Part shown: one piece after another, positions 1,141 through 62,908 of the stretch
Position numbering within the stretch: position 1 is the stretch's first letter
Layout: each line of letters begins with the position of its first letter
Assembly (NCBI RefSeq): GCF_006345805.1
Contig: NW_021831286.1
Span: 1-64,000 of the forward strand
Source of the DNA: Octopus sinensis
Lineage: Eukaryota
Direction: 5' to 3'
DNA length: 64,000 nucleotides
Notes under the pieces: model-generated
Databases searched by the model: none
Seen by the model: the letters and a program-made list of their open reading frames with translations, nothing else
What the model was told of the DNA's origin: nothing
Program-made: the position numbers and the translations under genes

Positions 1141-2683
1141 TTACAGAATGTTGTTTTTAATATAACATCAAGTAAAAATGACTTCTATAGTTTTCTTAAT
1201 GCTCCAGTTAATTTTTCATCACAGGTCTGATCGATTAAAACCCCTGGCTAATTGTGATCCATAAATTTCATAAATAGTGAGTTGAAAAAAACATTCATTT
1301 TCTGGCTTAGGTGTGACTATAAACCACGCAAGACCATGTTAGTTTTTCTCACGTTGTAAGCAACGACTTTTGAGATGCTGTTGTTCCATAGATGCTATCG
1401 AAAGTTGGGGGCCTTCATCGCATTCAAAATCCTTTAAATATGATTCTTGAAGTAATATTCCAGTAACTTCTAGAACTCAGAACATTTTAGTGAAAATCAA
1501 TAAGCTTAGAGAAGCCATGTCAAGTCAATCAAAAATGTTGCACAGAATCCTCCACGAGATAAAGGAACAAAACTATAATTAGTTCAAAATGAAAATTATT
1601 TTTATAATGATAATTTAAATTTAAATTAATCTCGCCAAAGAACAAACTTATTCTTGTTGTGAGTTTTTTCTGAGTAAAATATAGTTTCTAGAATAATTTT
1701 TGGTGACAATGGAGCAATTTCTTAAACTTAAACGAAACAAAACTGAAAGTCCCATGGTAATATCCTACCAAAAGCGTCAATTTCCCAAACAACCATTCGT
1801 ACATACTCCTTCGTTCACCAACATAAAAACAACACCTGGCTTAATGGAAAAAGCCCAAAAATCAAATTTTCTAAGAAAAACACTTGTTAATTATTTCTAA
1901 AATAAAACCAGGAATCTCAAGGTCACCTCAAGTGGTCAATCTCGGACAAATCAGCACTTTTTTATAACAAAATTGACCAAAACCAAATTCATTGTTCGGC
2001 TCGGAAGTACTATAACATTCACTTTTTTAGAAATGTCATTCACCGAACATTTCAATTTGGCCAAAATGCTAACACGGAATCTACAGTACGCCTAACTACC
2101 TCCCATTTATAACTACTCTCCTGAATGCTGCCACCGAGCACGCCATCGATATAATATCCGTAGGCTTGGACGACATGTCATTGAGTACAAGCAATTTTAA
2201 GTTTTTTTAATTTTTTGATTTTTAGTTCACCTATTCCTGATTTCAGAAATAACTCTAATTTGGTTAATTGTTCATATAATCGCTTTACTTTATGACTTCC
2301 ACTCCTTTCGATGACAAAGTTGAAAAAAAAACCAAGAATTCTGAAAACCATGCTCTTAGGGGCTCTCGCGATTACACGGAGTAGTCTATTTTTACGTAAT
2401 ATAATTGATTAAGGTGTAATTCTTTTTTATAACTATCTTTTTAAAACAAATGGAAGCCATTTGGGTGAACAATAGTTCGATTTTTACCGGTTACCGAGCG
2501 CTACGGGTTACTGAATGCTCAAATTTAACATTTAAAGAATTTTTTATAAAAATTAAACCTAAATTTTTTTAGTTATTATATTTAAAATTAATAAATATAT
2601 AATTTCAATATTTTTAAAAGGCGCAGCATTTGATAATTTTTAAATAGATAATTTACCATGCGTATTCTATAAAGTTTTCTTGA

Positions 2684-3137
2684 TGTCTCGCTTTTTTGTC
2701 AAAACTGTACAAGAATATGATCATATAGTTAAAATATTGGAAGAGCAGGGGATCATTGGAATATCTAAACAAAAAAATACAGATTAACTCGAAAGTCCAA
2801 GAATTTTACTTTCATTACCGGGCGGCTATATCTTAAAGACTCACGTGGAAACCATAAAATAGTCATTTCTGCAGACAATCATGAGGAGATGCAATTAGTG
2901 GCTACGCAAATTCATCAAATGACTCATTGCGGACATAACACGTTGGAAGAGTTTTGTAATCAGAGATATTTTGTTGTTAAACGCAAAATCATCAGGAAAG
3001 TAGTATCGGAATGTGATATATGTCGATTTGCGACACCACTAAAAATAGTTGATCCTGAAAACCACATTATAGCCTCACAACCAAATGAGAGATTTCAGAT
3101 AGATCTGATTGATCTCGAATGTCCGACGGAACAATGA
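2684..3137 (+). mobile_element. Ginger-like integrase fragment (H2C2 zinc-binding domain and start of core)
   Basis: ORF 2889-3137 has HQMTHCG...CDIC followed by IIASQPNERFQIDLIDL, homologous to the integrase at 46954-47745; disrupted upstream. Confidence 0.7.
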
Positions 3138-3399
3138 AAAAAACCCACATGAAACGAATCAAAAAAATAAATAAAGATCACAAATAATTAAAATTTTAGT
3201 TATGATCCATAAAAAAAGTTTTTTCAATTTCTGTGTAACGTTATATGAAAATTTTGGAGCCTTAGTGCTTAAACGTATGAGGAATGAGGCTATAATGTGG
3301 AGTTGAATGCTGATTCCACTCCCCGTACAATGTCTTCAATGTAAAAACAAGCAGATATGATCTTAGGGGATCTCCTAGCACATCAGGCTGTAAAAGAAC

Positions 3400-4166
3400 A
3401 ATTTTTTTCAATAACAAGCGAAATTGTAAAGTAATAAAAGAGATCTACTAGATGGGCAATCTTAGAGGTTTTTGGAATGCAAGTCTGAATAATTCGATCC
3501 CTCTTGACGCTGTTAAAAGCGTTTTTGAAACCGAATCTGACACCGACCAGAGTAAAAACATGAGTTGAGTTGCAGAATTTACAAGCTACTTGTATTGGGT
3601 CCTGCAGTTTTCCCATGTTCAGAGCGAATTCATCACATTGTCACTAGGCTTTTTATCAAAGGAAAATGTTTGCAGAGAAAAAAATTACTGGCCAAGGGAG
3701 TGATGTCTCCTGTCCAATTTCGGCTGACCAGACTAGTAATGGCCGAAAAAAGAGATGAAATTATATTGAAACTTATCTTCATTTCTAATTCTACCAGAGA
3801 TTGGGCTTTGGTCTTGTTCTGCATCGTGAGTTTTGCCACCGGAAAAGGCATTCCTTTACAAACGAATCTCTCCACAATGAAACTAGGAGAGATTGAACAG
3901 GATACCAGGTTGAGCAGGTCTACCAAAGCATTTTCTGTTACCCAGTAAGGCAGGTTTAGTATTACTAGTTTTTAGTTCCGCGGTGTCAAGTATTCAATTG
4001 AGTGTCCATAAAGACTTAAAAGAAGATTCCGCTCCCAATCATAAATAAAATCGTTTATATCATCTGCATTCTTAAGTAGAAGTTCGTAAAGATTCATTAT
4101 GGTGTTGCGAAGTCCGGGCCCTCGGGCGGTTGGAGATTTACAAATTACATTTGCGACTTGGATCAA
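3400..4166 (-). mobile_element. Degenerate reverse-transcriptase remnant, possibly CRE-like
   Basis: Minus-strand pieces FKNAFNSVKRDRII and KSPTARGPGLRN resemble RT motifs; many disruptions. Confidence 0.4.
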
Positions 4167-5051
4167 ATCAATTGTAGCGTTAGTCGAACATACAAGAATA
4201 GTTAGTAGAATATTCTAACCCCAACAAACTTCTAACAACAACGTGATTCATACAAAATGGCGCATGCTTTTGAAATTGTTAAGATCGCTGACTTTGCTGA
4301 AACCTTTACCTTTAAATGGCTCCGCTCTAGCCACGTGGCAAAAGCAAAGAAAAAACAAGACTCCTAAATATCAAAAATTCACAATTCAAAACACATTGGA
4401 TTCGTATTTGACCATTTATTCTTTCACGTTTTTCGTTTTTTTGTTACGCTTGACTCTTCTTTTAAAACACTTTAATCCGATCGATTAAATTGGAGGGAGT
4501 TAAATTGATAATTATATATTTTAGTGGTACACTATAATAAGCGCATGCCATCAAATCTGGTTCCAACATTAAGATTCGATTCAAAGATGACACTCCTCTC
4601 CAATATATTTTCACTGCAAAAAAGATGCATTCATTTAGAGCATAAATCAGATTGTAAACTATTGATTAGTGTCAATACTAGACATAATTGAAATCATATT
4701 TACAATATTTCGCAAAATAAATTAAAACTAATCGGCAGTTAAAATAAATTATAGTGATTTACAGTAATTAATATGCTAAAATCATACTGAACTATCACGT
4801 GTTAATGACCTAGTCAACAACAATATATTGGATGAAGGTAACTTTGCTTTTCCAAATATAGACTTGCTTGCTAAAAGTAAAAAACCAGGTAGACCCCAAT
4901 CATCAAATAAATCTGAAAATCGAAACAGTTCAGCAAAGTACTTTTTTTAGATACTTTATTGCTCAGTATTTAAAAAAAGAGAAAACATGCAGATCATGAA
5001 AAACAAAGACGAAAAAAAGAAAATGAAGACATCGAAGAATTAAAAGCGCTG

Positions 5052-5840
5052 ATGAATATTCCATCTAAGCCAAGATTCAAGAATCGTGAAATGACCAATC
5101 TATGTGAGGAATTCAATATCAAACGAATTCACGGAAGGCCAAACAATCCCCGCTCACAAGGGATTGTCGAACGCTTCAACCAGTCAATTACAAGAAAAAT
5201 GGCAAAAATGATCGACAATGATAATAAAAAGTGGCTGGAAAAATTAGAAAATGCAATGTACAATTATAACATTTCTGTCCACTCATCTTCTAATGAGAGC
5301 CCTTTTGAAAGATACCGGGGAATAAGTGGAATGAATACAATATTTTATGGTTGTAATTATAAAATTATTCCTTAGATAATTCAGGTAATGATTTGTTGAG
5401 TTCTGATCAAGTCGATGATGCAAACAATTGTCTGAGTCCAATTGAAAATTCATGTAATTTGAATTTCTATATGTAGATGATTGTAATTATTCGTTTACAA
5501 GTCCGAAAAGATTTCAGTTCGAAATTAACCCCATTGATCCTAATTCTAATTATTACAAAGCGATGAACAGAAAAATGAATGTTCACAATAGTAAGTATGA
5601 ATTTAGTGTTGGTGATAAAGTATGCATAAAAATTAATGTTTAGGTTCGAGTTAAAAAAGACTTTGGAACAAATACTTCGTTGCGACTGGATAAGTTTGAA
5701 TCTCCATATTATCCATCTGCAGAAATTATCAGTATTTTATCAAACAATCGCGTTGAGGTAGTTTAAACATTTAAATTTAATAGATAAAAAATTCAATGAG
5801 CGAAATTTCGATTGTGCCAATGTCCAGACTTAAAAAATAA
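5052..5840 (+). mobile_element. Ginger-like integrase, core and C-terminus, with three micro-introns
   Basis: IKRIHGRPNNPRSQGIVERFNQSI core. Introns at 5350-5375 (26 nt), 5620-5643 (24 nt) and 5758-5783 (26 nt); the spliced C-terminus aligns with the intronless paralog at 46349-46600. Stop at 5838-5840. Confidence 0.75.
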
Positions 5841-5884
5841 TTAACAAGTTATTATTCTTTGAAGTTTAATATTAATTACAATAT

Positions 5885-6288: not shown

Positions 6289-6425
6289 AATTACAATATT
6301 GACATTAAGTTAAGCTTCAAGGTCACGTCAGGTATCACGCGGCCCATAGGTGTCACGCAAACCATGTCACATAATATAATTTCATAGTGCACGTTTCTTC
6401 GGTTTTTGTTGACTGCTTTTTTACA

Positions 6426-7900
6426 ATGCCTAAAAACAGGAGTTCCAACACTAAGCGAATTTCTTCTATTGTTAAAAAATATCCTAAGGAGTTTTCATCT
6501 TCACTGGATGGAAAATTATTCTGCAAATTATGTAATTCTTACGTAACTACTAATAAGGAATGGTTTATTGATAAGCACAGACATTCTAAAAAGCATATTC
6601 TGAGAATCCCAGATACGAATAATACTTTGGATACTCATAGTAAAAATGAGGTTACTGCTGATTGTTTTGCCGTGGATCTTGCAAATGCATTTTTATCAGC
6701 AAATATTCCACTTCATAAGTTACGAAATACATCGATTATTGATTTTTTAATAAATATGGACATTATGTTCCTTCGGAAACCAAATGCAGAGACATTGTTA
6801 CATTTCTTGGTGAAAGGATGGTTTCACAAATTATTAACACAGTTTCAAGTGAATAAATTGTTTTAATGATTGACGAAAGTGATTTTGGAATTGTCTTGTT
6901 GGAACGTTAAAAAATCCACAAGAATATTTTTTAATTGATTGTATTGCAATTAATATAGCTCCCAATTCCGCGATTATATGTCAAATTATTGATGACGTCA
7001 TTCGCAAACTCAATGTTGATAGGAAAAATTTTTATTTACTTATTTCTGATGCTGCTTCATATATGGTTTCTTCTGGAAAAGTATTATAGCAATTATATTC
7101 AAATCTATTCCATGTCACTTGTGTGCCGCATTTATTACATAATTGTGCCTTCAGAATAAATCACATTATCCAGAGGTAGATAAATTAATATCGTGCGTCA
7201 AAGCACTTGTTGTCAAAAATAATTCACGACGTCAATTATTTACAGAAATTGATATCCACCCGAGCCCATTGTAACTAGATTGGGCTGTTGGTTAAATGAT
7301 GCTGACTATTATGCAAAAAATTTAACACAAATCATCAATATTTGTAATGGTATAGAAGAGGAATCTTTATTGATACAAAGAGCAAAGTAATCCGTTATGA
7401 ATGAATTTCTTCATATGAATTTAGAAGACATAAGCCGGGAATATCATTTATTAACAGATATTTTAATGGAAATTGAATCTAATAAATTCACTATTTCAAG
7501 AGCGTATCATTTTTTGAAAAATGTTGATTTTAAAGAAGATTCCTGCAAAATTCGAGACTATATAAGCTTACGAATTTCAAGAAACGACATTTTCAAAATA
7601 ATGGAGTTATCTAAGCTACCAATTACTCCATTTCACCACGCATTATTATTGGATTGCCCGGCAACATCGTGTGAAATAGAAAGATCATTTTCTATTCTTC
7701 ACAAAATTTTAACCAAAGATAGAAATTTCCTACCTGAAAATGTTAAATATTATTTAATGTTGTGCTTTAATAAATAAATTTCTGTTTCTTAGGGCAACTT
7801 TTTATGCATATTATGTCAACTTTTTTATTTTTTAAAGCAATTTAGTTGACTTTTAAGGTCAATTTTTTACATTTTTAAGAGCAACTTTCCGGTTGCCCTA
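6426..7900 (+). mobile_element. hAT-like transposon, disrupted transposase with right terminus
   Basis: N-terminal zinc finger (FCKLC...HRHSKKH), C-terminal PATSCEIERSFS dimerisation motif, terminus ...CCGGTTGCCCTA at 7889-7900; left TIR not found. Confidence 0.75.
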
Positions 7901-8081
7901 CTTATAAGTTAGATTGTTCTAAAACACGCTTCGGCAAAACGCGGCCCGCCAAGAAATTTTTCCAACTAACATGGCCCGCGGGCAAATTAATATTTATATA
8001 TAAATTTTATCTATTATTAAAAATTAAATAAATTTCTAAACGTGTTATAATTCTTTGTGGTAAATTTTATATGACGCTCAA

Positions 8082-8440
8082 GTGAAAATAATTCTACTGG
8101 TTTTGACTTGGGACGGGCTCGTTTCCAAGTTTTTTAAGAATTACATTGAAATCTTGGCTATCGAAGACGGAATTCAGTCTTATATACAGTCAATTGTGTT
8201 GAATAAAACCTTGGAGAGTATGATTGTCGAGTACAGGCACGGGATAAGAGTCACTGAAGAGGAGATAAATTCAGCCAGTAGCCTCTTAATTGAGGCAAGT
8301 CATTCGTACGAAGATGATATGTTGAATGAGTGAAAAAGAGTCGTAACTAACTTGGAGATAGAGGAGCATGGAGATTTGTTAGTTACTTCCTCTTCTAAAA
8401 AAAGGAGATTAACCTCCAGCGGACAACGGTCAGATTAACA
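8082..8440 (+). mobile_element. 3' tail of an RLE-type non-LTR retrotransposon (TWDG...YIQSIVL family)
   Basis: VLTWDGLVSKFFKNY...YIQSIVLNKTLES is homologous to 24470-24760 and 63560-64000, the latter showing the endonuclease motif. Confidence 0.65.
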
Positions 8441-8575
8441 TAAGTTAAATAATATTAACTTAATTAATCTATGTATGTTTTAAATTTTATTAAAATAATA
8501 CTAAATTTAGTTAAAATATGCAAGCGTTCCATGAATTTTTTGCCCTACTGTTTTTACAGATAAAATCAAAAATAA

Positions 8576-9443: not shown

Positions 9444-9539
9444 CACTAAATAAAATTAAAATATTTTAACAATTAATTTAAAGAAAATAATATTTTGGTT
9501 TAAATTAACCAATTAACCAAGAATTAGAATAGAATAGAC

Positions 9540-10345: not shown

Positions 10346-10365
10346 ATTAATTTTCTAATTTTCCA

Positions 10366-12060: not shown

Positions 12061-12069
12061 TTATCGAAT

Positions 12070-15775: not shown

Positions 15776-15864
15776 TTCAAAAAGGAGATAGTTTGAATTT
15801 GAATCATTTTTGTCGAGAAGTGAAGAACAAGGTCTCTACACGGTTAGATTTTAACGGTAATATA

Positions 15865-17073: not shown

Positions 17074-19888
17074 TTAATAATTTAAATCGTTGCTTAGCTC
17101 GCTCATTTGAATAAACATTTGTTCGAACAGTTCATTTAAATAATGTCCACTGACACTGAGTTTGAGGTCTTTAATCATCTACCACTGACTTTTATTATTA
17201 CTTGGTCTATTTTCAACTTTGTATCTTCTAAAACTGCCTTGTCTGTTTGATCTGCAGAATGCAGTATGGTTGCAATTTTTTCCCAAACTTCCTCTGTATT
17301 CTCAGACTATGGCAAAAAGAATACCTTAATTGGGGAGAGCGACTCCACTTGTCCTGATAAACAGCATACAGTCGTTAGATATAATTCAATGTTGCTAATA
17401 ATAAAAGATGTTTTCTACAATTAACACAACTAGTTACTTCTCGGCCAAATTTTAAAATATTAGAAAGATTTGATAAATTTAATGCAAGCTTGGAGCCAAC
17501 AGACCGTGTATATTTGAAGATAAAACTCTCTGGGTTATAATAATACTTGAATACTAATCAAAATAATACATTAATTGCTGCATTCAGTTTGTAATAGTCG
17601 TCGGATAGATTATGGACATAGTGTTCCAATTGGCTTTGTATTAACGTGTAATAGAGCGTTTTCCCCAAAGCCTTTTAATTATAATCACAAGAATACTTTT
17701 CCCGCCGAAATCAGTCTTTTTGTGTTCACGGAGCACGTGTTTAATATATTTTTCACGTTTACAGTCAAATTGTTTGATAGAGTTGACAAAAATTCGAATG
17801 CTTGGTCTGAAATTTCTTGTATGTGAGCATTCACATTATTCTAGAGCATGTTTTATTCAACTGACCTGAATTTCCCCCATTGATTGCACTCTGTCAGGTA
17901 GTGCAAGCATGACTATCACGGTGTCAAGAGTATCTCCAATATCCGCCACGGATTCTGCCAGTCGACTGTCCCTCTTGTGGATACAGTCAGTGTAAACGAA
18001 GAATTCTGTCACACGTCTCTTCAAATCTTGCCAGAGCTGCTCAATTTGCTCATTATTTCCTTTCATTGAGTCAAGGAGCTGATAGAGCCGGTTCAAGAAT
18101 ATAACTCTAAACATGAGAGAGAGAACTGTACATTCCATCAACCAGAACACATCCCCCTCCCGTAGATTCCTCGACCACTAGTCCTTCCAATCGAATGAAA
18201 GAAGAGAGCAAAAAGAACACGAGTGCAACTCCACACTTCCTAATTTTTGACTGGTTCATGTTTGTTGAGAAATGAAATTTTTTTTCAAACAGGTTCCCGC
18301 TCTTTTTTATAAATCGATTGTTAATTGATTCATTTTTTTCAAAAATTGTCCGCATCTTGGCGACATGGCGATGTTCCTCCCCAAAAAACGAATTGCAAGA
18401 TTCTCTGAACGTCGAGTCTGATTCGACGGAAGTCTTAGAAACCCTCACGTTATCGTAAAAATCTTTGATCGATCCATTCTGAGTTGGCACAGTATTCCCC
18501 AAAGATTGCTGAAGAGAGGAGACAGAATTGAAGATTTTGTAATGTAAATGAGAGTAGTGTCGCAAGAGGAATTCAATATTGTCAATTTCAGTAGTTAAAA
18601 TGTTGTATTTGGAAGTAAAGTTACGCCCAAAATCGAAAATGAATCGTCCTTTGCCGTATCCCCATTTTTCAACGTTCCCTACCGGCCAGGCGTGCTTTAA
18701 ACTTCTTGATTTGACTTTATAAATCAAAATATATTTGGGGGAAATTGAGAGAATGCGAGGAATCAACTTTCCATGTTTCAAATTAATTTCCTTAAGTTCA
18801 CCAATTTGGCCAAACTTGAATGTAAAAAAATGTAGCTCCGAAAAAGGGTTTCCCACAGCATTCTTTTACATAGTCCGACTTGATGACATCTCCAACTGAT
18901 CCTCGGAACAGTTTGTATTGCTGTAAAAAAAAATGCACCAAATTCAACCTCAGCCACTTTACGTTCAATCTTTCTATTTCTTTGATATATTTCGGGCAAG
19001 TAGTTCTGGAAGCTGCATATGTTAGAAATGAGTCACCACTTTATCGACTTGGCAGAGAAATCACCTACTTCAATTTGGCATTGCATGGCTGCTAATTTTA
19101 TGGCCGGTCCAGTATCGATTTGGCAAGTTCCTGAGAGAATTAGTCCAGAAAGCTTAAATAAAAGCAAATAACTACATGTTGGTAGAGAATATCTAATTCA
19201 ATGTAATTTCTTGGAATATTCTCGCTTATGTAAAGTCTTCTTTCCAATGTGATGATTTCGTTGGGAGAAATTCCTTGCTCGGGTAAACTCAGCCCATTTA
19301 GTAGCCAAACCACTGAAATATACGTAAATATTATGCCATTATTGTCAATATGTGATATAATTGGGTTATTCGGTTTTTTTATTGTGGTATGTCGGACTAG
19401 TTATCGCGGTTCTCTCCTAAGATAATACTCTTTCCAAACGTGAATTCCTATGAATTAATGACCATCATCAACCGTATAGTTTGCAAAATATAGGAATTAA
19501 ATCTCCTACCAGGCGAGAACAATTATATTTGACTGTCCTCAGGATCCCGGTCGATAACTTTATTTTTGCATATTGATGGTTGCATTTATATTCAAGGTAT
19601 TCCTATTCTTTTAATTATTTTATAAACTGTTGGTTTAGTTTGAATATAGTATCCAATCGGTTTATCATTCACCAACCAAATTTCCTTGTTGAGATCACTG
19701 GTCTTCATCATAAGGCTATAGTCTTCTAATTGTTAAAATTGAGACATGCCTTCGTCGAGGACTCTCAATTTTCGCACACTTGCTCGAAGAATTGCTATTA
19801 CTTGACGGACTGGCATTTTTAAGTCGACATTGATTCTCTCAACCGAGGCAATTTCGTGAGCAATTACCTTAATCGAAATAACAGGCAT
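17074..19888 (-). CDS. TLN1: Talin-like protein: complete FERM head (F0-F3) and a short helical C-terminus; at least 13 micro-introns
   Basis: Spliced segments align in register with talin: DYSLMMK..EIWL, IKLSTGILRTV, GIHVWKEYYLRRE, WLLNGLSLPEQGI..NEIITLERR, LAAMQCQIEVGD, FFGATFFYIQ|EINLKHGKLIPRILSI, WPVGNVEKW....FIFDFG. ATG at 19888, TAA at 17074. One apparent 1-nt deletion at ~19410. Confidence 0.85.
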
Positions 19889-23350: not shown

Positions 23351-23399
23351 CGTGTTTGATGCATTTGTTAGAATTGACTAGGGAACAACTTGAAAAAAT

Positions 23400-24420
23400 T
23401 GAGAAATTTTAAATTTCATCAATAGCTGAGAATTCATTAGACAAGAAACAACGATTTCGATTAAAAAGCTATCGCAAAAATTTTTTTTTGAAGACGGTAA
23501 AGCGTTTTTATTGAAGGATGGCCTAAAATTACGGTTCTTTGCAGTTGAAAATAGTGAACTGAAATTGAAGATAATTGAGGTAGTGTATCTGCTTTATTGA
23601 AATCTGAGCTAATAAACAATTTTGGCCGAGATAGACTTAGTAGTATGTGGAGGAATAGTTTCTACAACATAATGACAGAAGATATCCGCTTTGTTTTAAA
23701 AAAATGTGTTTATTGCCAAGTATTGGCTATTTATTTATTAGCTAGTCAAAAAAATTGATGGCAACCAAGCCAACTATCAGTCCAATCATTGCCAGAAGTC
23801 CTAGAGACCATTATATCCCAGATCTTATAGATCTCAGAAGATATTCAGAAACAAATCGATCAAACTCGTGGTATGCTGTTGTGAACTAGTAAGCTGTTGT
23901 AGAACTAGCAAAGAATAAAAGTGCATTGGAAATTTCATCTCTACTTGAGAATATATTCTACGTTATTGGAGATTGGAAATTTCATATCCCTAACCCGTTA
24001 TTCTCCAAATTGATAACGGAAGAGAGTTTCGCAATTCTGAAATGGATAAGCTGTGTGAATTTTTTAAAATAAAGCATATCTGTGAAAGACCTAGAGCACC
24101 TTGGGTACAAGGACAAGTTGAAAGGTTTTTTTAAAGCTATAATAAAAAGGTTCAACCAATCAATAAAACGATGAAAATCCTCAACAAGTGTTTCAGCCGG
24201 AAATTTTGGAGTTTACTTCAACATTATAAAGAGGATCGTATATGATTACAATCGAACAAAACATGACACGACCAGGAATATTCCTTTTCAAAGTTTTATG
24301 AGAATCAAAAAAACCAGACGAAAATTAAATAAACGAATTAATGGCATTCGGTGGAACTGACCCAGAAGTAGAAATAAATTACGAAAAAAATGAATGTGAC
24401 CGGCGACATTAAAATTTGGC
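23400..24420 (+). mobile_element. Decayed Ginger-like integrase with two micro-introns
   Basis: LRFFAVE..LKIIE|, FGRDRL, CVYCQ|, PIIARSPRDHY..DLIDLRRYS, DNGREF, RPRAPWVQGQVER. Introns 23580-23608 and 23720-23745 at the same positions as in 58878-59340. Confidence 0.75.
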
Positions 24421-34412: not shown

Positions 34413-35749
34413 GATTATTTTTTATGAAATACAACAAATTAAGGATTATTTTAATTCTGATTCCGATCCGTCATCTTTTAAAGATATCGATAAGAAAAAA
34501 AATACAGATTGAAAGAAATTTAGAATCTGATCCGGTTTTAAGACGGAAAACCCACATTCTGCAGAAAGATACTGACCTTCGTTTTTCGGCAGTCGAGGAA
34601 TATAACCTAACGCTCAAACACATTGAGGCTTCCTATTGTAAAACATGGTCAGTCAGAACATAATATGGATCACTTTGAACGACATCGTTTATTTGACAGG
34701 CTTCGTAGTTGACCCGAACTGAGGTTGCTCAGATTGTTTAAAAATGTTCATTTTCCAGGTAGTTTTTAGAACATTCTTAAAAAAATTGTCTTTAATTATA
34801 ACTCCATCGTTCAAAATCCCGTTCTATGTGTGTGTTGGCCAGAAACACTGTTCACGAGGGTATTTTGATTGGAGGCATATTTATATGGATAGAATTGATT
34901 AAAATTACATTCTTATGTTGGTCGATCAACGGCGTGGTCTGTTCATCGAATGGTGACAATAATAATTAAAAAATTGTATATAGGGAAAATCATTTGTTTT
35001 AAATTTTTCCATATGTTGTGACTAATTTTAAAATCAGTGGTGTTATGAACGACCCTTTCCTTCGCGATAAAGCTGACCATAAAGTCGAAAGAAATGCTAA
35101 AATACTTAATTTTTTTATTTACGGGCTCAGTCGACCGACTATCAACACTCAAATACTGACTGGGGCGGTACAGTAAAACATCAAAGCCCAATGGTCACCC
35201 AATCGTTTAGAATCAATTATAGCAAGACACAATTAAAGGCTTTAGCATTAAACTAAATTGGCTGGTTTTTTAATCAATAAGGGCTTTAATATACCTTTGA
35301 GAATTATTTTTTATTTAATTTTAAACCCCCAAACTTGCATAGCAAACCCAGCACAAACAGTCACAGCTAACTAATCAAATGAAGAATCCAAGGAAAGAAG
35401 GAACTGTCTGTGCCAATCAGCATTAGTTCCAAATTTTCAATACAGCCTTCCGGATCCAAAGAGAGGTGGGAATATCTGGTATGCCCATTTCCCATTTGTC
35501 AGCCTCCTACCGTCGCTCACCGAACATCATTTGTTTTCGGAAGGGTTTTACATAATGGAGATTTTTCATAGGTAATTTGATCAAGAGAAGGTAGAGATCC
35601 CCTTTCTACATCTGCTCGTGCCAGATGTACTCGTCGCCTCACGGATGGGAACGATGACAATACTTGACCCCAGCTGAAAACTTGCTTCTTTCGAAATCAA
35701 ACCCGCGAAATTCGTATTCCAAGATCTTCAGAATTTATAAAACTGAGAT

Positions 35750-45899: not shown

Positions 45900-45931
<32 letters not shown>
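42723..45931 (+). mobile_element. Near full-length CRE-like retrotransposon: PHD finger, RT, CCHC, RLE, poly-A
   Basis: TSD (AAAA)TTTTATATTG at 42709-42722 and 45928-45941; A28 at 45904-45931; KIPKGARIAAA, GGIRPIAVG, LDITNAFNS, GVQQGDP, WYLDD, CRCG..HPLSC, GDGKRPDG; disrupted at 44690-44960. Confidence 0.93.
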
Positions 45932-45936
<5 letters not shown>

Positions 45937-47669
45937 TATTGTCCAAATAGAGAAATCTATAAAGACAAATAATGTGCAGGACGATTTTTTCGTTAATTTG
46001 ATAATTTTATAAATTAATAAATAGCTTACTACAAAATCTGCTTTAAAATCGTACAGGAATAATGAAAATATTTGCTTAAGAATAGATTCGTTTATTTGTT
46101 TTTGAATTGTTTAATTTTTTTAAATGTTTAAATGACGCTTTTTGTTAACAATTTAGTCAATTTCGCGTTTAAATCTTTATGGAGTGTATTTTAGTTTCGA
46201 TTTCATTTTATTTAAACAAAAATGAAAATATGGAAAAGTAATTCAAATTCTTTTTTTTTTGAAATAGCAAATAGTTGTCTATTTTCGATTGCAATCATAA
46301 AAGAACAAAAATTTAAGATATAAAGAAGTTTATTCCGAAACAAAATTTTTATAGTTTTCCAACGATAGCTAGTCTATTAATATCGATCTCGTAAGGGGCC
46401 TCATGATTGATCAACATATTCGTCGAACTAATTTGGACCCTGTCGTGCTGTAAAATCCCAACGACAGTATATTCAGTACAATCCAAATGTTCGTGGAATG
46501 GTCGACGGCGTGTTGTTGTATTCGTATCTGTGTCGGTGTGGATGACCACTTTCGTCCCCAGAGGAAAGTCAAGGATATCATTCCTCCAATTAGATCGTCT
46601 CCTCATGGATTCAGCAGCACTATTAGTATTCCTCCTCGCAATATCTCGTAAATCTTCGGCTGCTGCAGAAGCTACTACAAGTCGATCCATCTCGTTGTCG
46701 TTTGTTTCCACATCAAGTCCATGTAGTTCTTGTTGAATTTGCTCGGTTCTTGGCTCTTCATTGTAGTCAAGTTGATTGATGGAATCAATATATTCAATGA
46801 GTGCCTGAGTATGACCTCGAGCCATTTGTTCTCTAATCCGTGGGCCATACATCAAATGAACAGGAGAAAAGCGCGTTGTAGAGTGTATCCTTGTATTATA
46901 TGCGTATGTTATATTTTCGAGGATATCAATCCAACGAAATCCATTCCCGTTGGTTAATAACGTCGAACTGAGCATCCATTTGAGTGTCTGATTAAGTCGT
47001 TCCACTTGACCCTGTATCCAGGACATCGGGCCCTCCCCCTGACATGGCGAATTCCAAATTCTTCGCACAACTGCGTCATCCGCGAGTTGCAGAATTCAAG
47101 TCCATTGTCGGTATGTATTATGAATACTTCCCCCAAAGAAAGAACAACACTTCGTATCCTCGGTATCACATCAGCCGAGTTCTTTGATTTCAGTGCTGAA
47201 GTCCAACAGTATTTCGTAAACGAGTCCATTATCACCAGCAACCATTTTTCGCCACTATTTTGATCGCTGTAATATCTTAGGTCCACAAGATCGATAATCA
47301 GCCTTTCTCGTGAAAACTTGGCAATTATTGGAGTAATTTGTCTCCTGGTTGCGAGCGTACGACGAGCTATGCAAGTTGTACATGCACTTAGAACATGATT
47401 CACATGTTCTATGCTAATTCCATATGCCAAGTTCTTCATATGATTGAATAATTTATCTCGACCTGGATGCCCCGTATCCAGGTGACACAACCGGACATAA
47501 TCATAAAGTTGTTCTTGTTCTTCAACAGTAAAAAATCGGACAAAATGATCAACTCCACGTTTAAACATAAGATTCGGCGGAAAGTGAATAAACTTACTCG
47601 CCCGGAGCCTGAAGGAACGAATTTCATTGGCGGTACTGAGTGTTGACGGTAAATTCGCATTGACTAGAT

Positions 47670-49542
47670 CAGGGGTCACCAAACTTTTTGCACTCGCGGG
47701 CCGGATTGACCCCAACACAATGAACGGGCGCCGGAGCACGTGCATAGGATTATAATTTTACTAGAAATTCATAAGTGTGTTTTTTACAATAAAAACTAAT
47801 TTAAACAAAAATAAAGTAAACAAAAATTTTAATGAGAGCTATGGAACTGTGATCTTTTTTTGATAAGTTCATCAATATTTGTTTTAAATGCTGCATCCTA
47901 TCATGAGAATTGATTTTAAGTGTCCGTCAGTCAATCTTGCACGATGGGCAGACTTAACATATTTCATCCTCGAAAACGTTTGCTCACATTGGTAAGTTGT
48001 GCCAATATAGAAATCATCTTTATCGCAAAATTCTTTAGTCTCGGAAACTCATCATCCTTGAGATATTCGTAGAACTCAGCGAGTTTGGTCCGTCTGTGAC
48101 AATCTTTGAGCTGTTCATTTGATTGTAAGTCAATAACTTCTAATTGTAATTCATGTTGAACATTTTCAACATTACAAGAAAATGGATTTTCGAACAAAAT
48201 TATATCGCTTTCAATTTTGATAATTTTGATAGCCAAGCAAGATCTGATAATTCGGGATAATAGTTATTTTTACTGGTTAGAAAAATATCAATCTCACTTT
48301 GGAGTTTATAAAATCTATTTAATACATTACCACAGCTAAGCCATCTAACTGCAGTGTAATATGGTAAGTCAAAATATTCAGATCCAAAATCGTCAAGTAA
48401 AACTTTAAACTGACGGTGATTAAGTGAGCTCCCTCGAACAAAGTTTATTATGCGAATAACTGGATTCAACACACATGAAATATTAAGAGCCTTCGCACAT
48501 AGTGCGTGCTGATGAAGGATGCAATGAATGAACAAAGGTGTTTGAAATATGTAATTCCTCCAATTTATTAGTTATTTGCCCAACTAGACCCTTTTTAGAA
48601 CCAGCCATATTCTTTGCCCCGTCAATCGTAACACAACTCAGTTTCTCTCCATTCAAGGTTATAGTCACTTATAGTTTGTTCCAATTCATCAAAATATCTT
48701 TTCCAGTGGTTGTTCCATGAATAGAACAAACAGATGCCAGTTCTTCAGTTATGGAAATATTCTCATCAACTCCACGAATAAAAATAAGAAGTTGCGATGT
48801 TCCCGAAATATCAACTGACTCATCCAATGCAAGAGAATACCACAACATATTACTTGTCTTTTCACAAATTTGTAAATATATATTTTTTCCAGCTCTTCAT
48901 TTCTCCGTGATACAGAACTCGCCGACAAACTTATTCATCAAATAAGGAAGAATTTAGTGGGCACAACAATTAACTGCTTCAATAATGCAATTTTTGATAT
49001 ACATCCCATCACTAAAGGGTTTCCCGTGTTGTGAAATAATTTTCGTTATCTCGTATCCAGCTCTTGTTACATTTTCATTATTTTCAAATTTTTTTTTAAA
49101 GGCCTTGTTGAATTTGTAAAGTGCGTTTCAGTGATTCAACTTTATCCTCACGTAGCTTTCCAGTGTACTTGGAATATATCGGAGCATGATTCGTTTCATA
49201 ATGACGTCGAATGTTATACTCCTTCATACAGAGATATGTTCGTGGCATATTAAACAATAAGCTTTCTGCTTTAATTCATCTTTCGCAAAAAAATACTTCA
49301 ATTCCCATATTTATTGAATACACGGCATTCGCGGTCAACCTTTCTTTTCATATTAGACATAGCAACAAAGAAAAATTTAACGTTAATGCTGATAAGTTTT
49401 TTTTCGAATTAAATCTTGCAAAATAGTTTAATTTTTTAATTAAAGTTTTTATTTAAGTTAATATTAAGGTATTAATTGAATATCTCGAAATAGTGCGCGG
49501 GCCGGATAAAATGTTGTCGCGGGCCGTAGTTGGTGACGTCTG
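47670..49542 (-). mobile_element. hAT (GTF2IRD2/SPIN-like) element with disrupted transposase
   Basis: 8-bp TSD GACTAGAT at 47662-47669 and 49543-49550; imperfect TIRs CAGGGGTCACCAAACT / CAGACGTCACCAACT; SLALDESVD, TIDGAKNM, HCILHQHALC, VRWLSCG motifs. Confidence 0.92.
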
Positions 49543-58877: not shown

Positions 58878-59340
58878 ATGCCTGTAGTGAGACTATATAA
58901 GGAAACACAAGAAAAAATCAAAGAAATGAAGTACCCCAACTTTGATACATCGTCAATCAAGTGGCATGAACGATACAGGCTCACAAAATTGGGAAGGAAT
59001 TTCTATTTTGAAAATGGAAAAACATATTTTCGGAAGAATGGGCTTAAATTGCGTTTTTTCTGTGAAGATGAAATCGAATTAAAGCTTAAGTGCGTTGAGG
59101 TGCAACTTAATAAATACAAGTTAGGCGGAACATAACCATAACCACTTTGGGAGAGACCGACTTTTTTCGAAATTAAGAAATCTCTATTATGGATTGAATA
59201 GAGAAGAAATCTCTAAGGTGATTTCGCTTTGTGCTTTCTGTCAAGTAATAACTCCTTTCAGCAAATATTTTTAGTCGAAAAAATTATTGTCTACGGAGGC
59301 TCCAATTACGCCAATCATTGCAATCGATTGTGTAACTAAT
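58878..59340 (+). mobile_element. Ginger-like integrase N-terminal fragment with two micro-introns
   Basis: LKLRFFCEDE..LKLKCVE|AEH...FGRDRL...CAFCQ|; introns 59100-59124 (25) and 59245-59274 (30). Confidence 0.72.
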
Positions 59341-59647
59341 GAGAAACTCAAGTCACATGATTTTTATTGATGCATGTTATTATACAAAAAATAAATAGCA
59401 TTTAAAATTAAAAATTATATGCTTTTTAACAAAATTAAAAAAGAATTATTCCATATTCAATTTTATATTAAAAAAGTAAAAATAGCATTTTAGCACCTAA
59501 ATTGCCTTACTCATAACTTTTTCAAAAATAAAGAAAATAAATAGTAAAATGCTCACAAAGGCTGCCAATTCAACTTATTCGTTGTGTAAACTTAGCTTTT
59601 TGAGAAAGTTGGAAAATAGAGCTCTGCATCAAAAACACAATTATTTA

Positions 59648-60404
59648 TTAAATATAACATCGACGAGCACGATCAAGGGAGAAACGTCGAAGGACATTCC
59701 GAACATCGCGAGTAAAGCGAAGGGCGTCAAGGAATGGTAGAACATCCAATAAGTGAGTATCGAGGACATCGCCCATCCAAGACTTAATCAAAATCGAGTT
59801 TTGAGGGAAGGAATGGTGAATGAACAGGGAATCGTCCAAAATAAAAATAGAGGACAAGTCATTGCTGATCATACGAATGTCCTTGAATATATTATTCCTC
59901 TCCAACGAACAGTGCTGTCATAGAGACAAGGAGATAACCAAACGATGAAAGACAGAGCAGAAGACGGTCGAGTCCTCATCCAGTAGTTGGACTACTCTCC
60001 TAGCATATGCTTCCTGTGCGGCCGTGAAAACAACAACGTTGTACCACCCACTGATCTGGCAATTAAAATGGGTCACTAACACATGAAAGGAATTCTTGCA
60101 CGTGGGGTCGTTTGAGAATGTAAAAGTCTTCGAGTCCGTCCTTCGAGAAGTTCCTTACTGAGTGAACCAATGTCTCGTCCAAGTCGAGGACAATTGTCTT
60201 TCTCCTCACTTCATCTGAGCATGTTAGACATAAAAACAGACACAGCCTGGACGTGGAGGATGCACTCAAAGGAGATTCTATATAATTGGGAGCCTGTGGT
60301 ATAAACCACGTGGATACCTGACCTGGACGAAGTACTTGTGATAAAACAATCACCAAAGTACAGAACAAGTCTAAACAACAAGCACAGATACGGCCAAGAG
60401 TCAT
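59648..60404 (-). CDS. CTDNEP1: CTD nuclear envelope phosphatase 1 (Dullard)
   Basis: PLSASSTSRL..VRRKTIVLDLDETLVHS, KRPHV, DLSSIFILD, IKSW...LLDVLPFLDALRFTRDVRNVL; micro-introns. Confidence 0.88.
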
Positions 60405-60828
60405 TTAAATACTATTTTTAGTTATTAGTTCTATTAATATAATCAAATATTGTTGTTATTATTTCAAAATGTTATTAATGATAACTACAAAAGCATTTTT
60501 CCACTTTTTCTATTAGAATCAACTTGCGTACGTTCACCTAATGAGGCTATTTCTCCACCTATCATACACAAAAACACGATTCTTGCTCCCCACCTCATTT
60601 TCGTGTCTACCCTTATTTCCCACTACAGATTGTTCCTTAATGTGGTCAACTGCCTTCTTTTCAGTGATTGAATTTATGTTTTCATATCTATGTGCACGCG
60701 GTATTTTAAAAAGACTGTTTTCCTATTTTAGTAATCCTACCATTTGACCCCATAAAAAGATGCTTTCAGACTAGACTTGCCGTTATTTGGGGAATAGCAA
60801 ATAAATAAAATTAAATTGTATCATAGCA

Positions 60829-62690
60829 TCATGACTTTTCAATCTCATCGATGGTCTCAGGTAAATGTCTTTGGTGTGTCTCGGGCAGAAGGAATACCAA
60901 AGCACTGCTGAGAAGGCTCAGTATTCCAAAACATGATCTGGCCACCACTTCCATATTAGTCTACAAATATAAAGCTCACAATACCCCTGTTTGAGAAGCC
61001 GCGAGAATGGTTGTTGCCAATACCCCTCCTAGTCCTTCGGCAACTTTGAACACCCCGTCGGATATACTCCTGACGTGGCATACCCAACATTACCTAACAG
61101 GGGTCGGCATTATTTCCGAGGAAACCAAGCCGATGATCGAGTAGGCTGCAGTTATCCCAAACTTACCGACTATTGTACTTCCCAGAGCTACGTGTTCAAC
61201 GTTTTTCCAATTTACTTATAAATTAATTATTACATTTACCGATTTCTGGAACCATAAGAGAAGCCAGTATATTACATAAACCAGTGATTAAATAAAGAAT
61301 TGAAATGGCCCGTCGACCCCCTAATCTGGTGGAATTGCGATTTATATTATTTTTAATTAAGCTTCATAATATGAACTTTGAATTAAGTGCCATTGCAAGG
61401 ATGTATGCGGGGATTTCCACAACCGCGCTGAGAGTCATATTTAAATAAAAGTTGCCCTTGAAGTTCCCAATAGAATAAGTCAATCCAAAATAGACAATGG
61501 CAGTGACCATCCTTATACGTCACAAGTTGAGAGCTAACCATATAAACATCAAAATAAATGAAAATAGACGCATTTTGGGTGTCCGAAATAAATCAAAATG
61601 AGTGTGTTTCCTCGTTGGTGCATTCTGAACAGCTCTTCCAAATCAAGTAGAGATCTTACAAAGTTTCATCACGACAGAACTCTTCAAAGGGGACACGTCT
61701 CTTTCCCGCAGCCTTTAGAATTGTTTTTTTGGCACTTTGATATTTTCTGCGTGAAATAAGCCACACGACCGATTCAGGCATACCCCTAGATTAATGGAAA
61801 AAACAAGAAACCAAATAAACAGAACAGGAATCAGTCCAAATACCCCCAGACATACTTGAAAATATATCCAATCGGGGGTCAAATACCCAACTAACACTAA
61901 ACTCAGCATTCCGACACTCCACAAAGAAACCATTGGAATAAAAGCCTTTGCTCGTTGGGACCGAGAAAAGGATTCACTGAGGTATATATAGGCCAAATTA
62001 GACGACATCTAATGTGATTAGGTTAAATAACTCTATTGGTCATGCCAATAAAAAATCGAATGGCAATATAACTTTTCAACGAAGAAATGAATATGATTCC
62101 AAAGTTGAACACGCTCTGTAGCATTAGAAGGATAATGATTGGCCATTTCCTTCCATACCAATCACCCAGAGGCATGAAAATAAACCCAACCACAATTGCT
62201 CCAGACATGTAAGAGGTGTCGGCCAATTGTAGGAGATAAGCATTTTCGCACACGCCATTAAACTATTTTTTAATCAAATAACTTACTTTCGTGGTGAGCG
62301 TGGGTTTGTGTGGCGTAGTGAAATCCCACCCCTCAAAACCGCATGGTTGAGTAGTGTTTGTTTTATTTCCGAAATATACGTATTTTTGACACTTGGAAGG
62401 ATTTCCCTCCTCATTTAAAGGAATGTATTTTTCGATGGATAAATTTTCTTAATTTATTAAAATTTAAACGTGCCAGAGAGTTTGCAGTGGTATGACTCTG
62501 GGGTACGGCCAATAAAAATTGAACTCAACAAATTCCAGGATCCATTAATGGTAATAAAAGCGACGATAGAAAAAACAACAAAATGAAAAAATGTATATTT
62601 TCTTAGCCAGTCATAAAACTTGGAAATGTCAATTTTTCCTATCTCGTCTGAGTCGCTGCTGCTTGTTTGAATTGAAATATTTTCAATCAT
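60829..62690 (-). CDS. SLC22-like organic cation/anion MFS transporter
   Basis: TPESYHC, CENAYL, GDWYGRK, YIYLSESF..SQRA, DLFRTPKMR, YFGL, VEIPAY, GKFGITAAYSII..SSEIMPT, LLPET...LPETI.EIE; several micro-introns; stop at 60829-60831. Confidence 0.85.
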
Positions 62691-62908
62691 TATCAAAAAA
62701 TTAGTCACTAGAAAATGGGTTTTAATTGTTATATTTTTTATGGTTTAATATTACATTTTTGTTAGTCAAAAAGACTTTTATTTAAATGAATTAAAAATTC
62801 TAGTTTAAAATGACTATTTTCAATTCCAAAAAACCAGTTAATTTTATTTATTATTTAATCTTACCTATAAATAAATAAATAAAATAAATAAATAAATCTC
62901 ACCTATAC

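What the first reader, a model, noticed from the sequence alone, without database searches (positions are those of the whole stretch)
5052..5840. Integrase transposon family carrying host-sized micro-introns at conserved positions
This copy needs introns of 26, 24 and 26 nt, and the spliced product (FSVGDK|VRVKKDF...NNRVE|IKN) aligns with the intronless paralog at 46349-46600 (FPLGTKVVIHTD...HDRVQIS). Two other copies (23580-23745 and 59100-59274) share introns after (I/V)E and after CxxCQ. Ginger elements are known to have introns; here intron-rich and intronless lineages coexist, and the introns match the host's 22-30 nt size range.
Basis: partly seen in the sequence, partly recalled or inferred. 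Interest (0 to 1): 0.7.

Follow-up and report, generated by a model that had tools for sequence, protein, structure and literature searches.

The report
Micro-introns in dicyemid integrase transposons
Dead copies of integrase-type (Ginger2-like) DNA transposons, in what is almost certainly a dicyemid parasite genome, carry genuine 23-30-base introns of the same tiny size as the host's own, so the finding is real but is a known kind of element shaped by an unusual host.

Summary
The window has five integrase (H2C2 + DDE) gene copies from three old lineages.

- **Copy A** (2683-3137 and 5046-5840) has no introns in its N-terminal half. Its C-terminal half needs four GT..AG excisions, not three: 26, 23, 24 and 26 nt.
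- **Copies B, C and fragment E** share two intron sites, after K(I/C/H)(I/V)E and after CxxCQ. B has a third inside QGQVER|FNQ.
- **Copy D** has no introns, and a 99%-identical second copy sits on another contig.

Removing the segments gives gap-free alignments to intronless relatives. The chance of GT..AG at each alignment-anchored insertion is 0.0025-0.02. B and C diverged under protein-level selection (codon-position identity 0.63/0.71/0.37) with the introns in place, so the introns were spliced.

Three host genes in the window (talin-like, NIF phosphatase, MFS transporter) use 19-25-nt introns. The host is a micro-intron animal, most likely Dicyema. Related contigs filed under Octopus sinensis look like parasite contamination.

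Relatives include a 1.8-kb microsporidian element with 213-nt terminal inverted repeats, which points to Ginger2/TDD-type transposons. All intron-bearing copies here are dead, no inverted repeats were found in the window, and splicing was not seen directly. I rate it a new member of a known kind, of modest interest.

The parts
2683..3137 (+). Copy A, N-terminal half: start codon, H2C2 zinc finger and first catalytic D. It has no introns. There is one frameshift in an A-run near 2770, and homology ends after IDLIDL.
   Evidence: tblastn of intronless relatives P0036, P0037 and P0038 aligns residues 1-147 without gaps.
3138..5045 (.). Unrelated DNA that splits copy A. About 60 codons of the catalytic core, including the second D, are missing.
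   Evidence: Residues 148-207 of P0036 have no match in the window; sequence read.
5046..5840 (+). Copy A, C-terminal half. Five exons (5046-5349, 5376-5453, 5477-5619, 5644-5757, 5784-5840) give an intact 231-codon reading frame once spliced.
   Evidence: Scripted splicing. 41-45% identity to the Dictyocoela proteins P0036 and P0038.
5350..5375 (+). Intron A1: 26 nt, GT..AG, phase 1, in the variable linker.
5454..5476 (+). Intron A2: 23 nt, GT..AG, phase 1.
   Evidence: The exon between A1 and A2 is rich in D, N and S, like the linkers of the relatives.
5620..5643 (+). Intron A3: 24 nt, GT..AG, phase 0. In frame, but it ends in a TAG stop.
   Evidence: tblastn shows an 8-codon insertion exactly here relative to P0036, P0037 and P0038.
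5758..5783 (+). Intron A4: 26 nt, GT..AG, phase 0.
23359..24360 (+). Copy B, a decayed full-length-type copy. It has an in-frame TAA at 23410, a frameshift in a T-run at 23483-23491, a deletion of the second-D region with stops near 23886, a frameshift before DNG, and an in-frame TGA after FNQSIKR.
23580..23608 (+). Intron B1: 29 nt, GT..AG, phase 0, after KLKIIE. Same site as C1 and E1.
23720..23745 (+). Intron B2: 26 nt, GT..AG, phase 0, after CVYCQ. Same site as C2 and E2.
24125..24149 (+). Intron B3: 25 nt, GT..AG, phase 2, inside QGQVER|FNQ. Copies A and D have no intron here.
   Evidence: The alignment to P0166 and P0178 has no gap at this point.
34547..34830 (+). Fragment E, a decayed N-terminal fragment of the B/C lineage. 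It keeps intron remnants at 34628-34652 (25 nt, GC..AG) and 34759-34779 (21 nt, acceptor lost).
45917..47676 (-). Copy D, an intronless integrase gene. Coding runs from about 47667 to 46349, with one 1-nt frameshift near 47030. The unit is repeated at 99% identity on another contig.
58878..59373 (+). Copy C: start codon and N-terminal 145 codons, then truncated. Introns C1 at 59100-59124 (25 nt) and C2 at 59245-59274 (30 nt), both GT..AG and phase 0.
59648..60404 (-). Host comparator: an NIF/CTD-phosphatase-like gene with introns at 60080-60056 (25 nt) and 59938-59915 (24 nt).
   Evidence: After splicing, Pfam NIF matches profile positions 1-160 of 160, E = 2.8e-39.
18110..19888 (-). Host comparator: a talin-head-like FERM gene with introns of 25, 25, 23 and 24 nt (19627-19603, 19472-19448, 19175-19153, 19036-19013).
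   Evidence: After splicing, Pfam matches FERM_f0, FERM_M and IRS-type PTB.
60800..62744 (-). Host comparator: an MFS/SLC22-like transporter gene with introns of 24, 23 and 19 nt (62286-62263, 62031-62009, 61804-61786).
   Evidence: Pfam Sugar_tr and MFS_1 match continuously across the junctions.

Best explanation
The window is DNA of an animal that splices ultra-short introns, most probably a dicyemid such as Dicyema japonicum, the kidney parasite of Octopus sinensis. It holds remains of three old lineages of integrase-only cut-and-paste transposons of the Ginger2/TDD type.

In two lineages (A, and B/C/E) the transposase gene carries ordinary GT..AG spliceosomal introns of 23-30 nt (mean 26). 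The host spliceosome removed these from the transposase mRNA, as it does for host genes. The third lineage (D) has none.

Shown:
- the integrase identity of the copies
- the positions and boundaries of the segments, and their colinearity with intronless relatives once removed
- shared positions in three diverged copies
- micro-introns in host genes of the same contig

Inferred:
- The introns were spliced. The argument is that B and C evolved under protein-level selection while both carried the frame-breaking segments.
- The elements moved by terminal inverted repeats and a DDE mechanism. This rests on relatives.
- The host is a dicyemid.

All intron-bearing copies in this window are now dead.
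For: Integrase identity:
- Pfam rve and Integrase_H2C2.

Intron properties:
- Nine segments of 23-30 nt are all bounded by GT..AG, and removing them restores the reading frames.
- After removal, the alignments to intronless homologues have no gap at A3, A4, B1/C1, B2/C2 and B3.
- Chance of GT..AG per anchored site is 0.0025-0.02.
- B, C and E have the same two sites in phase 0, with unalignable intron sequences of 29/25/25 nt and 26/30/21 nt.
- B versus C nucleotide identity by codon position is 0.63/0.71/0.37. That is purifying selection after their split.

Host introns:
- 19-25 nt in the NIF, talin-like and MFS genes of the window.
- The literature gives 26.2 +/- 1.9 nt (PMC2222250) and a median of 27 nt (PMC6543705) for dicyemids.
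- D. japonicum has 36.7% GC and 49% repeats, and its host is O. sinensis (PMC6736024).

Transposon nature:
- D exists as two copies about 99% identical in different flanks.
- Fragments of copy A's N-terminal half and its flanks recur at 85-90% identity in L002.
- Relative P0038 lies in a 1,816-bp element with 213-nt terminal inverted repeats at 98%.
- Relative P0002 has 17-nt terminal inverted repeats.
- Sources name the relatives 'KRAB-A domain-containing protein 2'. The KRBA2 integrase domain belongs to the Ginger2 clade (PMC3575427).
Against: - No spliced transcript was seen.
- No terminal inverted repeats or target-site duplications were found around any window copy.
- Every intron-bearing copy is truncated or carries stops or frameshifts.
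- A's four introns rest on a single copy, and A1 and A2 lie in a poorly conserved linker.
- Simply asking whether excisions can open the ORF is weak evidence: 17 of 256 boundary-dinucleotide pairs also succeed.
- The host's identity is indirect. No dicyemid reference sequence was available for comparison.
Confidence: 0.78

Rival explanations
1. The 23-30-nt segments are random insertions, filler DNA or small duplications that built up in dead pseudogene copies. They were never spliced.
For: All the copies that carry them are dead. ORF rescue by arbitrary excisions is easy in AT-rich DNA.
Against: - All nine segments have GT..AG ends. The joint chance for the five alignment-anchored sites is about 3e-11.
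- Their sizes fall in the narrow host intron range.
- Two sites are shared by three copies whose third codon positions are saturated while first and second positions are conserved. The segments therefore predate a long period of selection on the protein.
- A's C-terminal half has no lesion other than the four segments.
Confidence: 0.03
2. These are a host gene family of domesticated integrases (like KRBA2, SCAND3 or GIN) and its pseudogenes. They acquired introns as any host gene would and are not mobile elements.
For: No terminal inverted repeats or target-site duplications were found in the window. NCBI names the D protein 'KRAB-A domain-containing protein 2-like'. The lineages are old and divergent.
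Against: - There are many decayed fragments in a repeat-rich context.
- D occurs twice at 99% identity in different flanks.
- Fragments of copy A's N-terminal half and its flanks recur on another contig.
- The closest relatives are elements flanked by terminal inverted repeats.
- No KRAB, SCAN or other host domain is fused to the integrase.
Confidence: 0.1
3. The contig is true octopus DNA. The micro-intron-bearing copies arrived by horizontal transfer from the dicyemid parasite, so the octopus could not splice them.
For: The nearest database copies are on contigs deposited as Octopus sinensis.
Against: - Ordinary cellular genes on the same window use 19-25-nt introns: NIF phosphatase, talin-like and MFS transporter.
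- The 'octopus' contig L001 carries a PSMD14/RPN11 gene with a 23-nt intron and a compact DEAD-box helicase gene.
- Nine O. sinensis proteins, but none from other Octopus species, are among the best 120 hits of a window LINE ORF.
Confidence: 0.04
4. The integrase genes are the 3' ends of the pol genes of LTR retrotransposons, or the integrases of Maverick/Polinton elements.
For: The rve and H2C2 architecture is shared with Gypsy integrases. Some sources call the relatives 'Gag-Pol polyprotein'.
Against: - Copies A, B and C start with their own ATG, and no RT or RNase H lies upstream on the same strand.
- The relatives are stand-alone proteins of 420-465 aa.
- One relative sits between 213-nt inverted, not direct, repeats in a 1.8-kb unit.
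- Maverick integrases lack the N-terminal zinc finger (PMC2836005), and these proteins have it.
Confidence: 0.03

Closest known systems
Ginger2/TDD DNA transposons (Bao, Kapitonov & Jurka 2010, PMC2836005)
   Same: - A single transposase of about 450 aa with an H2C2 zinc finger and a DDE core related to Gypsy integrase.
- No GPY/F or YPYY motif.
- Relatives are short units (1.8 kb) flanked by terminal inverted repeats in AT-rich targets.
- The relatives are named KRBA2-like, and KRBA2 lies in the Ginger2 clade (PMC3575427).
   Different: - Terminal inverted repeats, TGTNR termini and 4-bp target-site duplications could not be shown for the window copies.
- In the Dictyocoela relative, TGTCG starts 2 nt inside the repeat.
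- In that paper, introns are described for Ginger1 only, not for Ginger2.
- I made no tree with reference Ginger2 sequences.
[quoted passage not shown]
   Same: They are integrase-type transposase genes interrupted by canonical GT-AG introns. Some intron positions are conserved between family members.
   Different: - Ginger1 has GPY/F and YPYY motifs plus OTU or Ulp1 domains, and CCGG targets. None of these is seen here.
- Intron sizes there are ordinary. Here they are 23-30 nt, and the positions are different.
Host spliceosomal micro-introns of dicyemids (PMC2222250, PMC6543705, PMC6736024, PMC13644364)
   Same: Length (mean 26 nt here, 26.2 +/- 1.9 nt published), GT..AG ends, AT-richness and weak extended splice-site consensus. 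Host genes in the window show the same.
   Different: The published host introns sit at anciently conserved positions and are shrunken versions of older introns. The transposon introns have no counterpart in any relative found.
Integrase-only elements of the microsporidia Dictyocoela muelleri, D. roeselum and Nosema granulosis (annotated 'Gag-Pol' or 'KRBA2')
   Same: They are the closest relatives found for lineage A (41-45% identity over both halves). Further microsporidian proteins are among the relatives of lineage D (42-46%). P0038 has the same domain order and size, and 213-nt terminal inverted repeats.
   Different: They have no introns and are intact, in a very different host. Nothing here shows the direction or reality of any horizontal transfer.

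Membership tests
Ginger2/TDD DNA transposons | Transposase with an N-terminal H2C2 zinc finger and a DDE integrase core | tested here: met
   Pfam rve E = 1.5e-13 (copy D). Integrase_H2C2 E = 4.3e-7 for copy C (above the Pfam cutoff) and 0.0014 for D (below the cutoff). D, D and E residues are present in copy D (DLVDL, MDSF, QGQVER).
Ginger2/TDD DNA transposons | No GPY/F module and no YPYY motif (these distinguish it from Ginger1 and Gypsy) | tested here: met
   Judged by inspecting the family alignment. There is no conserved GP[YF] in the C-terminal region and no YPYY at the N-terminus. No profile test was run.
Ginger2/TDD DNA transposons | Terminal inverted repeats of about 50-300 bp with TGTNR termini | tested here: inconclusive
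   No credible inverted repeats were found around A, B, C, D or E; the copies are truncated or nested. Relative P0038 has 213-nt terminal inverted repeats at 98%, ending TATGTCG...CGACATA. Relative P0002 has 17-nt repeats starting CAGTCAG.
Ginger2/TDD DNA transposons | 4-5-bp target-site duplication in an AT-rich target | tested here: inconclusive
   No element ends are known for the window copies. In L003 a possible TTAT duplication flanks the element. That is one case only.
Ginger2/TDD DNA transposons | Phylogenetic placement with reference Ginger2, TDD-4 and KRBA2 integrases | not tested
   No reference Ginger2 sequences were on hand. The only support is the sources' naming of relatives as KRBA2-like and the published placement of KRBA2 in the Ginger2 clade (PMC3575427).
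Spliceosomal GT-AG introns | GT at the 5' end and AG at the 3' end | tested here: met
   9 of 9 in copies A, B and C. Fragment E has GC..AG at one site and has lost the acceptor at the other.
Spliceosomal GT-AG introns | Removal restores the reading frame and colinearity with intronless homologues | tested here: met
   A1 and A2 lie in a variable linker, so for those two only the frame and the amino-acid composition support them.
Spliceosomal GT-AG introns | Position and phase conserved between diverged gene copies while the intron sequence is not | tested here: met
   Two sites are shared by B, C and E, both in phase 0. Exons are conserved at codon positions 1 and 2 only.
Spliceosomal GT-AG introns | Length compatible with the host's splicing machinery | tested here: met
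   23-30 nt, against 19-25 nt in three host genes of the window and 26-27 nt published for dicyemids.
Spliceosomal GT-AG introns | Spliced transcripts exist | not testable with these tools
   No read or transcript data were accessible. The protein searches returned no dicyemid transcript-derived product.
LTR-retrotransposon (Gypsy) pol integrase | Integrase is the C-terminal domain of a pol ORF, with RT and RNase H upstream, between LTRs | tested here: not met
   The copies have their own ATG and no RT or RNase H upstream on the same strand. The relatives are stand-alone proteins between inverted repeats.
Maverick/Polinton c-integrase | Integrase without an N-terminal H2C2 zinc finger, in a 15-20-kb element with polB and capsid genes | tested here: not met
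   The H2C2 finger is present. The units are about 1.8 kb.

The most novel reading that the evidence does not exclude
The micro-introns were born inside the transposase genes after these elements colonised the dicyemid lineage. That would be at least seven separate gains in two lineages, each an insertion of about 25 nt with no counterpart in any relative. These transposons would then record recent creation of ultra-short introns in an animal whose host introns were previously known only as shrunken ancient ones. The intronless lineage D would be a later arrival.
Probability: 0.4. Interest if true: 0.6.

Novelty: new member of a known kind. Interest (0 to 1): 0.37.

Why it matters
- **Intron origins.** Transposase genes with host-style introns are well known. 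Here the host is one of only two animal groups known to splice introns under 30 nt. The elements therefore give independent, non-host test cases for what a 23-30-nt intron needs in order to be spliced. If the introns were gained in place, they also show how such introns arise.
- **Gene finding.** Gene finders and repeat annotators that ignore micro-introns will shatter these genes into fragments.
- **Database hygiene.** Contigs and RefSeq proteins filed under Octopus sinensis appear to be dicyemid DNA. This matters for anyone using that assembly or looking for host-parasite gene transfer.

Tried and rejected
- **ORF-rescue decoy test.** I asked whether 4 or fewer excisions of 20-32 nt can open copy A's reading frame, for all 256 pairs of boundary dinucleotides. 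17 pairs succeed (41 with five excisions), so this test does not discriminate. I replaced it with the alignment-anchored boundary test. The run for copy C was invalid because I included the stop codon.
- **Inverted-repeat searches.** Around all five copies there were only weak AT-rich matches. One was a 44-nt pair at 70% (1858-1901 and 5830-5873), which I do not trust.
- **Looking up the window's own record.** The query was a 232-aa ORF; it is not on record.
- **More dicyemid copies.** A word-indexed profile search and an exhaustive profile search returned no close copies, so copy A's four introns rest on one copy.
- **LINE ORF search to separate octopus from dicyemid.** It was suggestive only: hits are 62% identical or less.
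- **Kinase-like region 16700-15800.** I expected a host gene with micro-introns. It is a frameshifted pseudogene.
- **One MFS junction (62469-62448, 22 nt).** It does not fit the reading frames. A homopolymer error is possible.
- **Variant genetic code.** In-frame TAA codons in the talin-like gene and in copy B made me consider a ciliate-type code. I rejected it because D, A and the NIF gene end at TAA exactly where their homologues end.
- **IES-like excision.** Boundaries of the TA..TA type, as in ciliate internal eliminated sequences, do not fit. The boundaries here are GT..AG.

Full report
**Observation.** The region 5046-5840 (+) encodes the C-terminal half of an integrase. Read straight through, it breaks four times. 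Removing four GT..AG segments gives one 231-codon ORF ending at TAA. The segments are 5350-5375 (26 nt), 5454-5476 (23), 5620-5643 (24) and 5758-5783 (26). The junctions FSVGDK|VRVKKDF and NNRVE|IKN align without gaps to the intronless copy D at 47745-46349 (-) and to database proteins. tblastn with intronless relatives shows an 8-codon insertion exactly at 5620-5643. Copies B (23359-24360) and C (58878-59373) each have two GT..AG segments in phase 0 at the same codon positions, after K(I/C)(I/V)E and after CxxCQ. These are 23580-23608 (29 nt) and 23720-23745 (26) in B, and 59100-59124 (25) and 59245-59274 (30) in C. Pfam assigns rve and Integrase_H2C2.

**What else is there.** A self-search found more pieces.
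- The N-terminal half of copy A lies at 2683-3137. It has its own ATG and no introns. About 1.9 kb of unrelated DNA separates it from the C-terminal half, and the roughly 60 codons around the second catalytic D are missing.
- B has a third intron at 24125-24149 (25 nt, phase 2) inside QGQVER|FNQ, where A and D have none.
- Fragment E (34547-34830) belongs to the B/C lineage. It keeps remnants at both shared sites: 34628-34652 (25 nt, GC..AG) and 34759-34779 (acceptor lost).
- B is heavily decayed, with TAA at 23410, frameshifts, a deletion of the second-D region and a TGA.
- C is truncated after 145 codons.
- D has one 1-nt frameshift near 47030.

A second D copy, about 99% identical over 1.76 kb, lies in different flanks on another contig (L001). 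It has a different frameshift, so D was intact and duplicating recently.

**The host.** The 'host-sized' claim needed checking, because the nearest database copies are labelled Octopus sinensis and octopus introns are long. Three cellular genes on the window's minus strand settle it.
- An NIF/CTD-phosphatase-like gene becomes a clean 234-aa ORF after removing 25- and 24-nt GT..AG segments. It then matches Pfam NIF over profile positions 1-160 of 160, E = 2.8e-39.
- A talin-head-like FERM gene needs segments of 25, 25, 23 and 24 nt.
- An MFS transporter needs segments of 24, 23 and 19 nt.

The 'octopus' contig L001 also carries a PSMD14/RPN11 gene. Its exons ...ALLK|MLKHGRAGVPMEV... are joined by a 23-nt intron. 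Among animals, introns this short are known only from dicyemids and myxobolid myxozoans (PMC13644364). Published values for Dicyema are a mean of 26.2 +/- 1.9 nt (PMC2222250) and a median of 27 nt (PMC6543705). D. japonicum has 36.7% GC and 49% repeats and lives in O. sinensis (PMC6736024), which matches this window. I infer that the window is dicyemid DNA. I also infer that at least contig VCDQ01009500.1, and probably VCDQ01000492.1 (which shares many repeats), is parasite contamination in the octopus assembly.

**Are the segments introns?** Opening an ORF by excision is weak evidence: 17 of 256 arbitrary boundary-dinucleotide pairs also rescue copy A. Four stronger arguments apply.
- For insertions anchored by gap-free alignment to intronless homologues (A3, A4, B1/C1, B2/C2, B3), GT..AG among the equivalent placements has a chance probability of 0.0025-0.02 each. 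The product is about 3e-11.
- All nine lengths fall within 23-30 nt, with a mean of 26.0.
- B, C and E share two sites and the phase, while the intron sequences themselves cannot be aligned.
- B versus C nucleotide identity is 0.63, 0.71 and 0.37 at codon positions 1, 2 and 3. Most of their divergence therefore happened under selection on the protein.

Both copies carry the frame-breaking segments, so by parsimony their common ancestor did too. A gene kept under selection with such segments must have had them removed from its mRNA. That last step is an inference; no transcript data were available.

**What the family is.** The copies have their own start codons and no RT or RNase H upstream. 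Their relatives are stand-alone proteins of 420-465 aa. A rough NJ tree and BLAST give three lineages.
- A groups with proteins of the microsporidia Dictyocoela muelleri and D. roeselum, at 41-45% identity over both halves.
- B and C group together, as sister to the clade that contains D.
- D groups with proteins that sources name 'KRAB-A domain-containing protein 2'.

The A-like Dictyocoela gene P0038 lies in a 1,816-bp unit with 213-nt terminal inverted repeats at 98%. The repeats end TATGTCG...CGACATA, with a possible TTAT target duplication. A D-like Logan contig has 17-nt terminal inverted repeats. The KRBA2 and SCAND3 integrase domains belong to the Ginger2 clade (PMC3575427). Ginger2 is defined by H2C2 plus DDE, no GPY/F or YPYY motifs, terminal inverted repeats with TGTNR ends, and 4-bp duplications (PMC2836005). 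The protein features are met. Inverted repeats and duplications could not be found for the window copies, so membership is probable but not complete. LTR-retrotransposon pol and Maverick integrase were tested and do not fit.

**Gain or loss.** No relative found has anything at the intron sites. That covers 9 proteins in the profile search, 97 in the exhaustive search, and the closest B relatives P0166 and P0178. A's introns and the B/C introns are at different positions, and D has none. The simplest reading is several gains within dicyemid-resident lineages. The databases hold ORF-based predictions, however, so they would under-represent intron-bearing relatives. I put that reading at about 0.4.

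**Comparison and verdict.** Introns in transposase genes, including Ginger1 (1-4 introns, some shared with GIN-1 and GIN-2; PMC2836005), are established. The introns here are micro-sized because the host's are. I found no paper on dicyemid transposons with introns. This is a new member of a known kind. It is of modest interest for intron-size limits and intron gain, and it yields a useful side result on assembly contamination.

**What led nowhere.** See Tried and rejected. Nothing in this work touched a virus, a toxin or anything needing referral.

Noticed in passing
L001 (GCA_006345805.1 contig VCDQ01009500.1) about 8720-9640 (-) and 9880-12100 (+); L002 (VCDQ01000492.1): Contigs deposited as Octopus sinensis carry a PSMD14/RPN11 gene with a 23-nt intron and a compact DEAD-box helicase gene. 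L002 shares many repeats with this window at 78-95% identity, and L001 holds the second copy of element D at about 99%. They look like dicyemid parasite DNA in the octopus assembly, and RefSeq proteins such as 'KRAB-A domain-containing protein 2-like [Octopus sinensis]' are probably mislabelled.
   Followed up: partly
window 47674-47745 (-) and L001 about 940-1022: Two different hAT-like terminal repeats abut exactly the same nucleotide at the 5' edge of the D element in its two copies. One is CAGGGGTCACCAAAC..., the other CAGGTGTTCTCAACC.... Both D copies lack the first 16 or so codons found in relatives. I have no explanation.
   Followed up: partly
window 19888-18110 (-): The talin-head-like FERM gene has two in-frame TAA codons (near 19735 and 19403) and a frameshift in an A-run near 18866, in an otherwise well-spliced frame. 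It may be a pseudogene, or these may be assembly errors. Several other frameshifts in the window also sit in homopolymer runs (2770, 23483-23491).
   Followed up: no
window 59648-60404 (-): An intact NIF/CTD small-phosphatase-like gene of 234 aa with two introns of 25 and 24 nt lies immediately downstream of truncated copy C.
   Followed up: yes
window 60800-62744 (-): An MFS/SLC22-like transporter gene has micro-introns of 24, 23 and 19 nt. The 19-nt intron would be unusually short even for a dicyemid. One further junction (62469-62448) does not fit the reading frames.
   Followed up: partly
window 15800-16700 (-): A protein-kinase-like region (HRDIKPDNFLV-type motif) is spread over three frames with no introns to explain it. 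It is a frameshifted pseudogene.
   Followed up: partly
L003 4756-6571 (Dictyocoela muelleri SDVU01000034.1): An intact 1.8-kb integrase-only element with 213-nt terminal inverted repeats sits in a microsporidian. Both window clades have their best named relatives in the amphipod microsporidia Dictyocoela and Nosema granulosis. This may be horizontal spread among parasites or a sampling effect.
   Followed up: partly
window 6387-8500 (+), 24830-26205 (-), 27430-28626 (+), 32864-33688 (-), 43431-45841 (+), 58266-58697 (+): The rest of the window is a mosaic of decayed hAT, Tigger/pogo (Tc5 HTH), LINE (RVT_1, with a conserved ...LFQRISLAILRGNC tail domain) and Helitron/Pif1-helicase fragments. 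No micro-introns were noticed in the parts of these that I read.
   Followed up: partly
protein P0167 (representative library, origin unknown): A relative of the B/C lineage has an 8-residue insert (FNFYYIKT) inside the zinc-finger region. It could be a read-through 24-nt intron at yet another position. Its contig could not be looked up.
   Followed up: no
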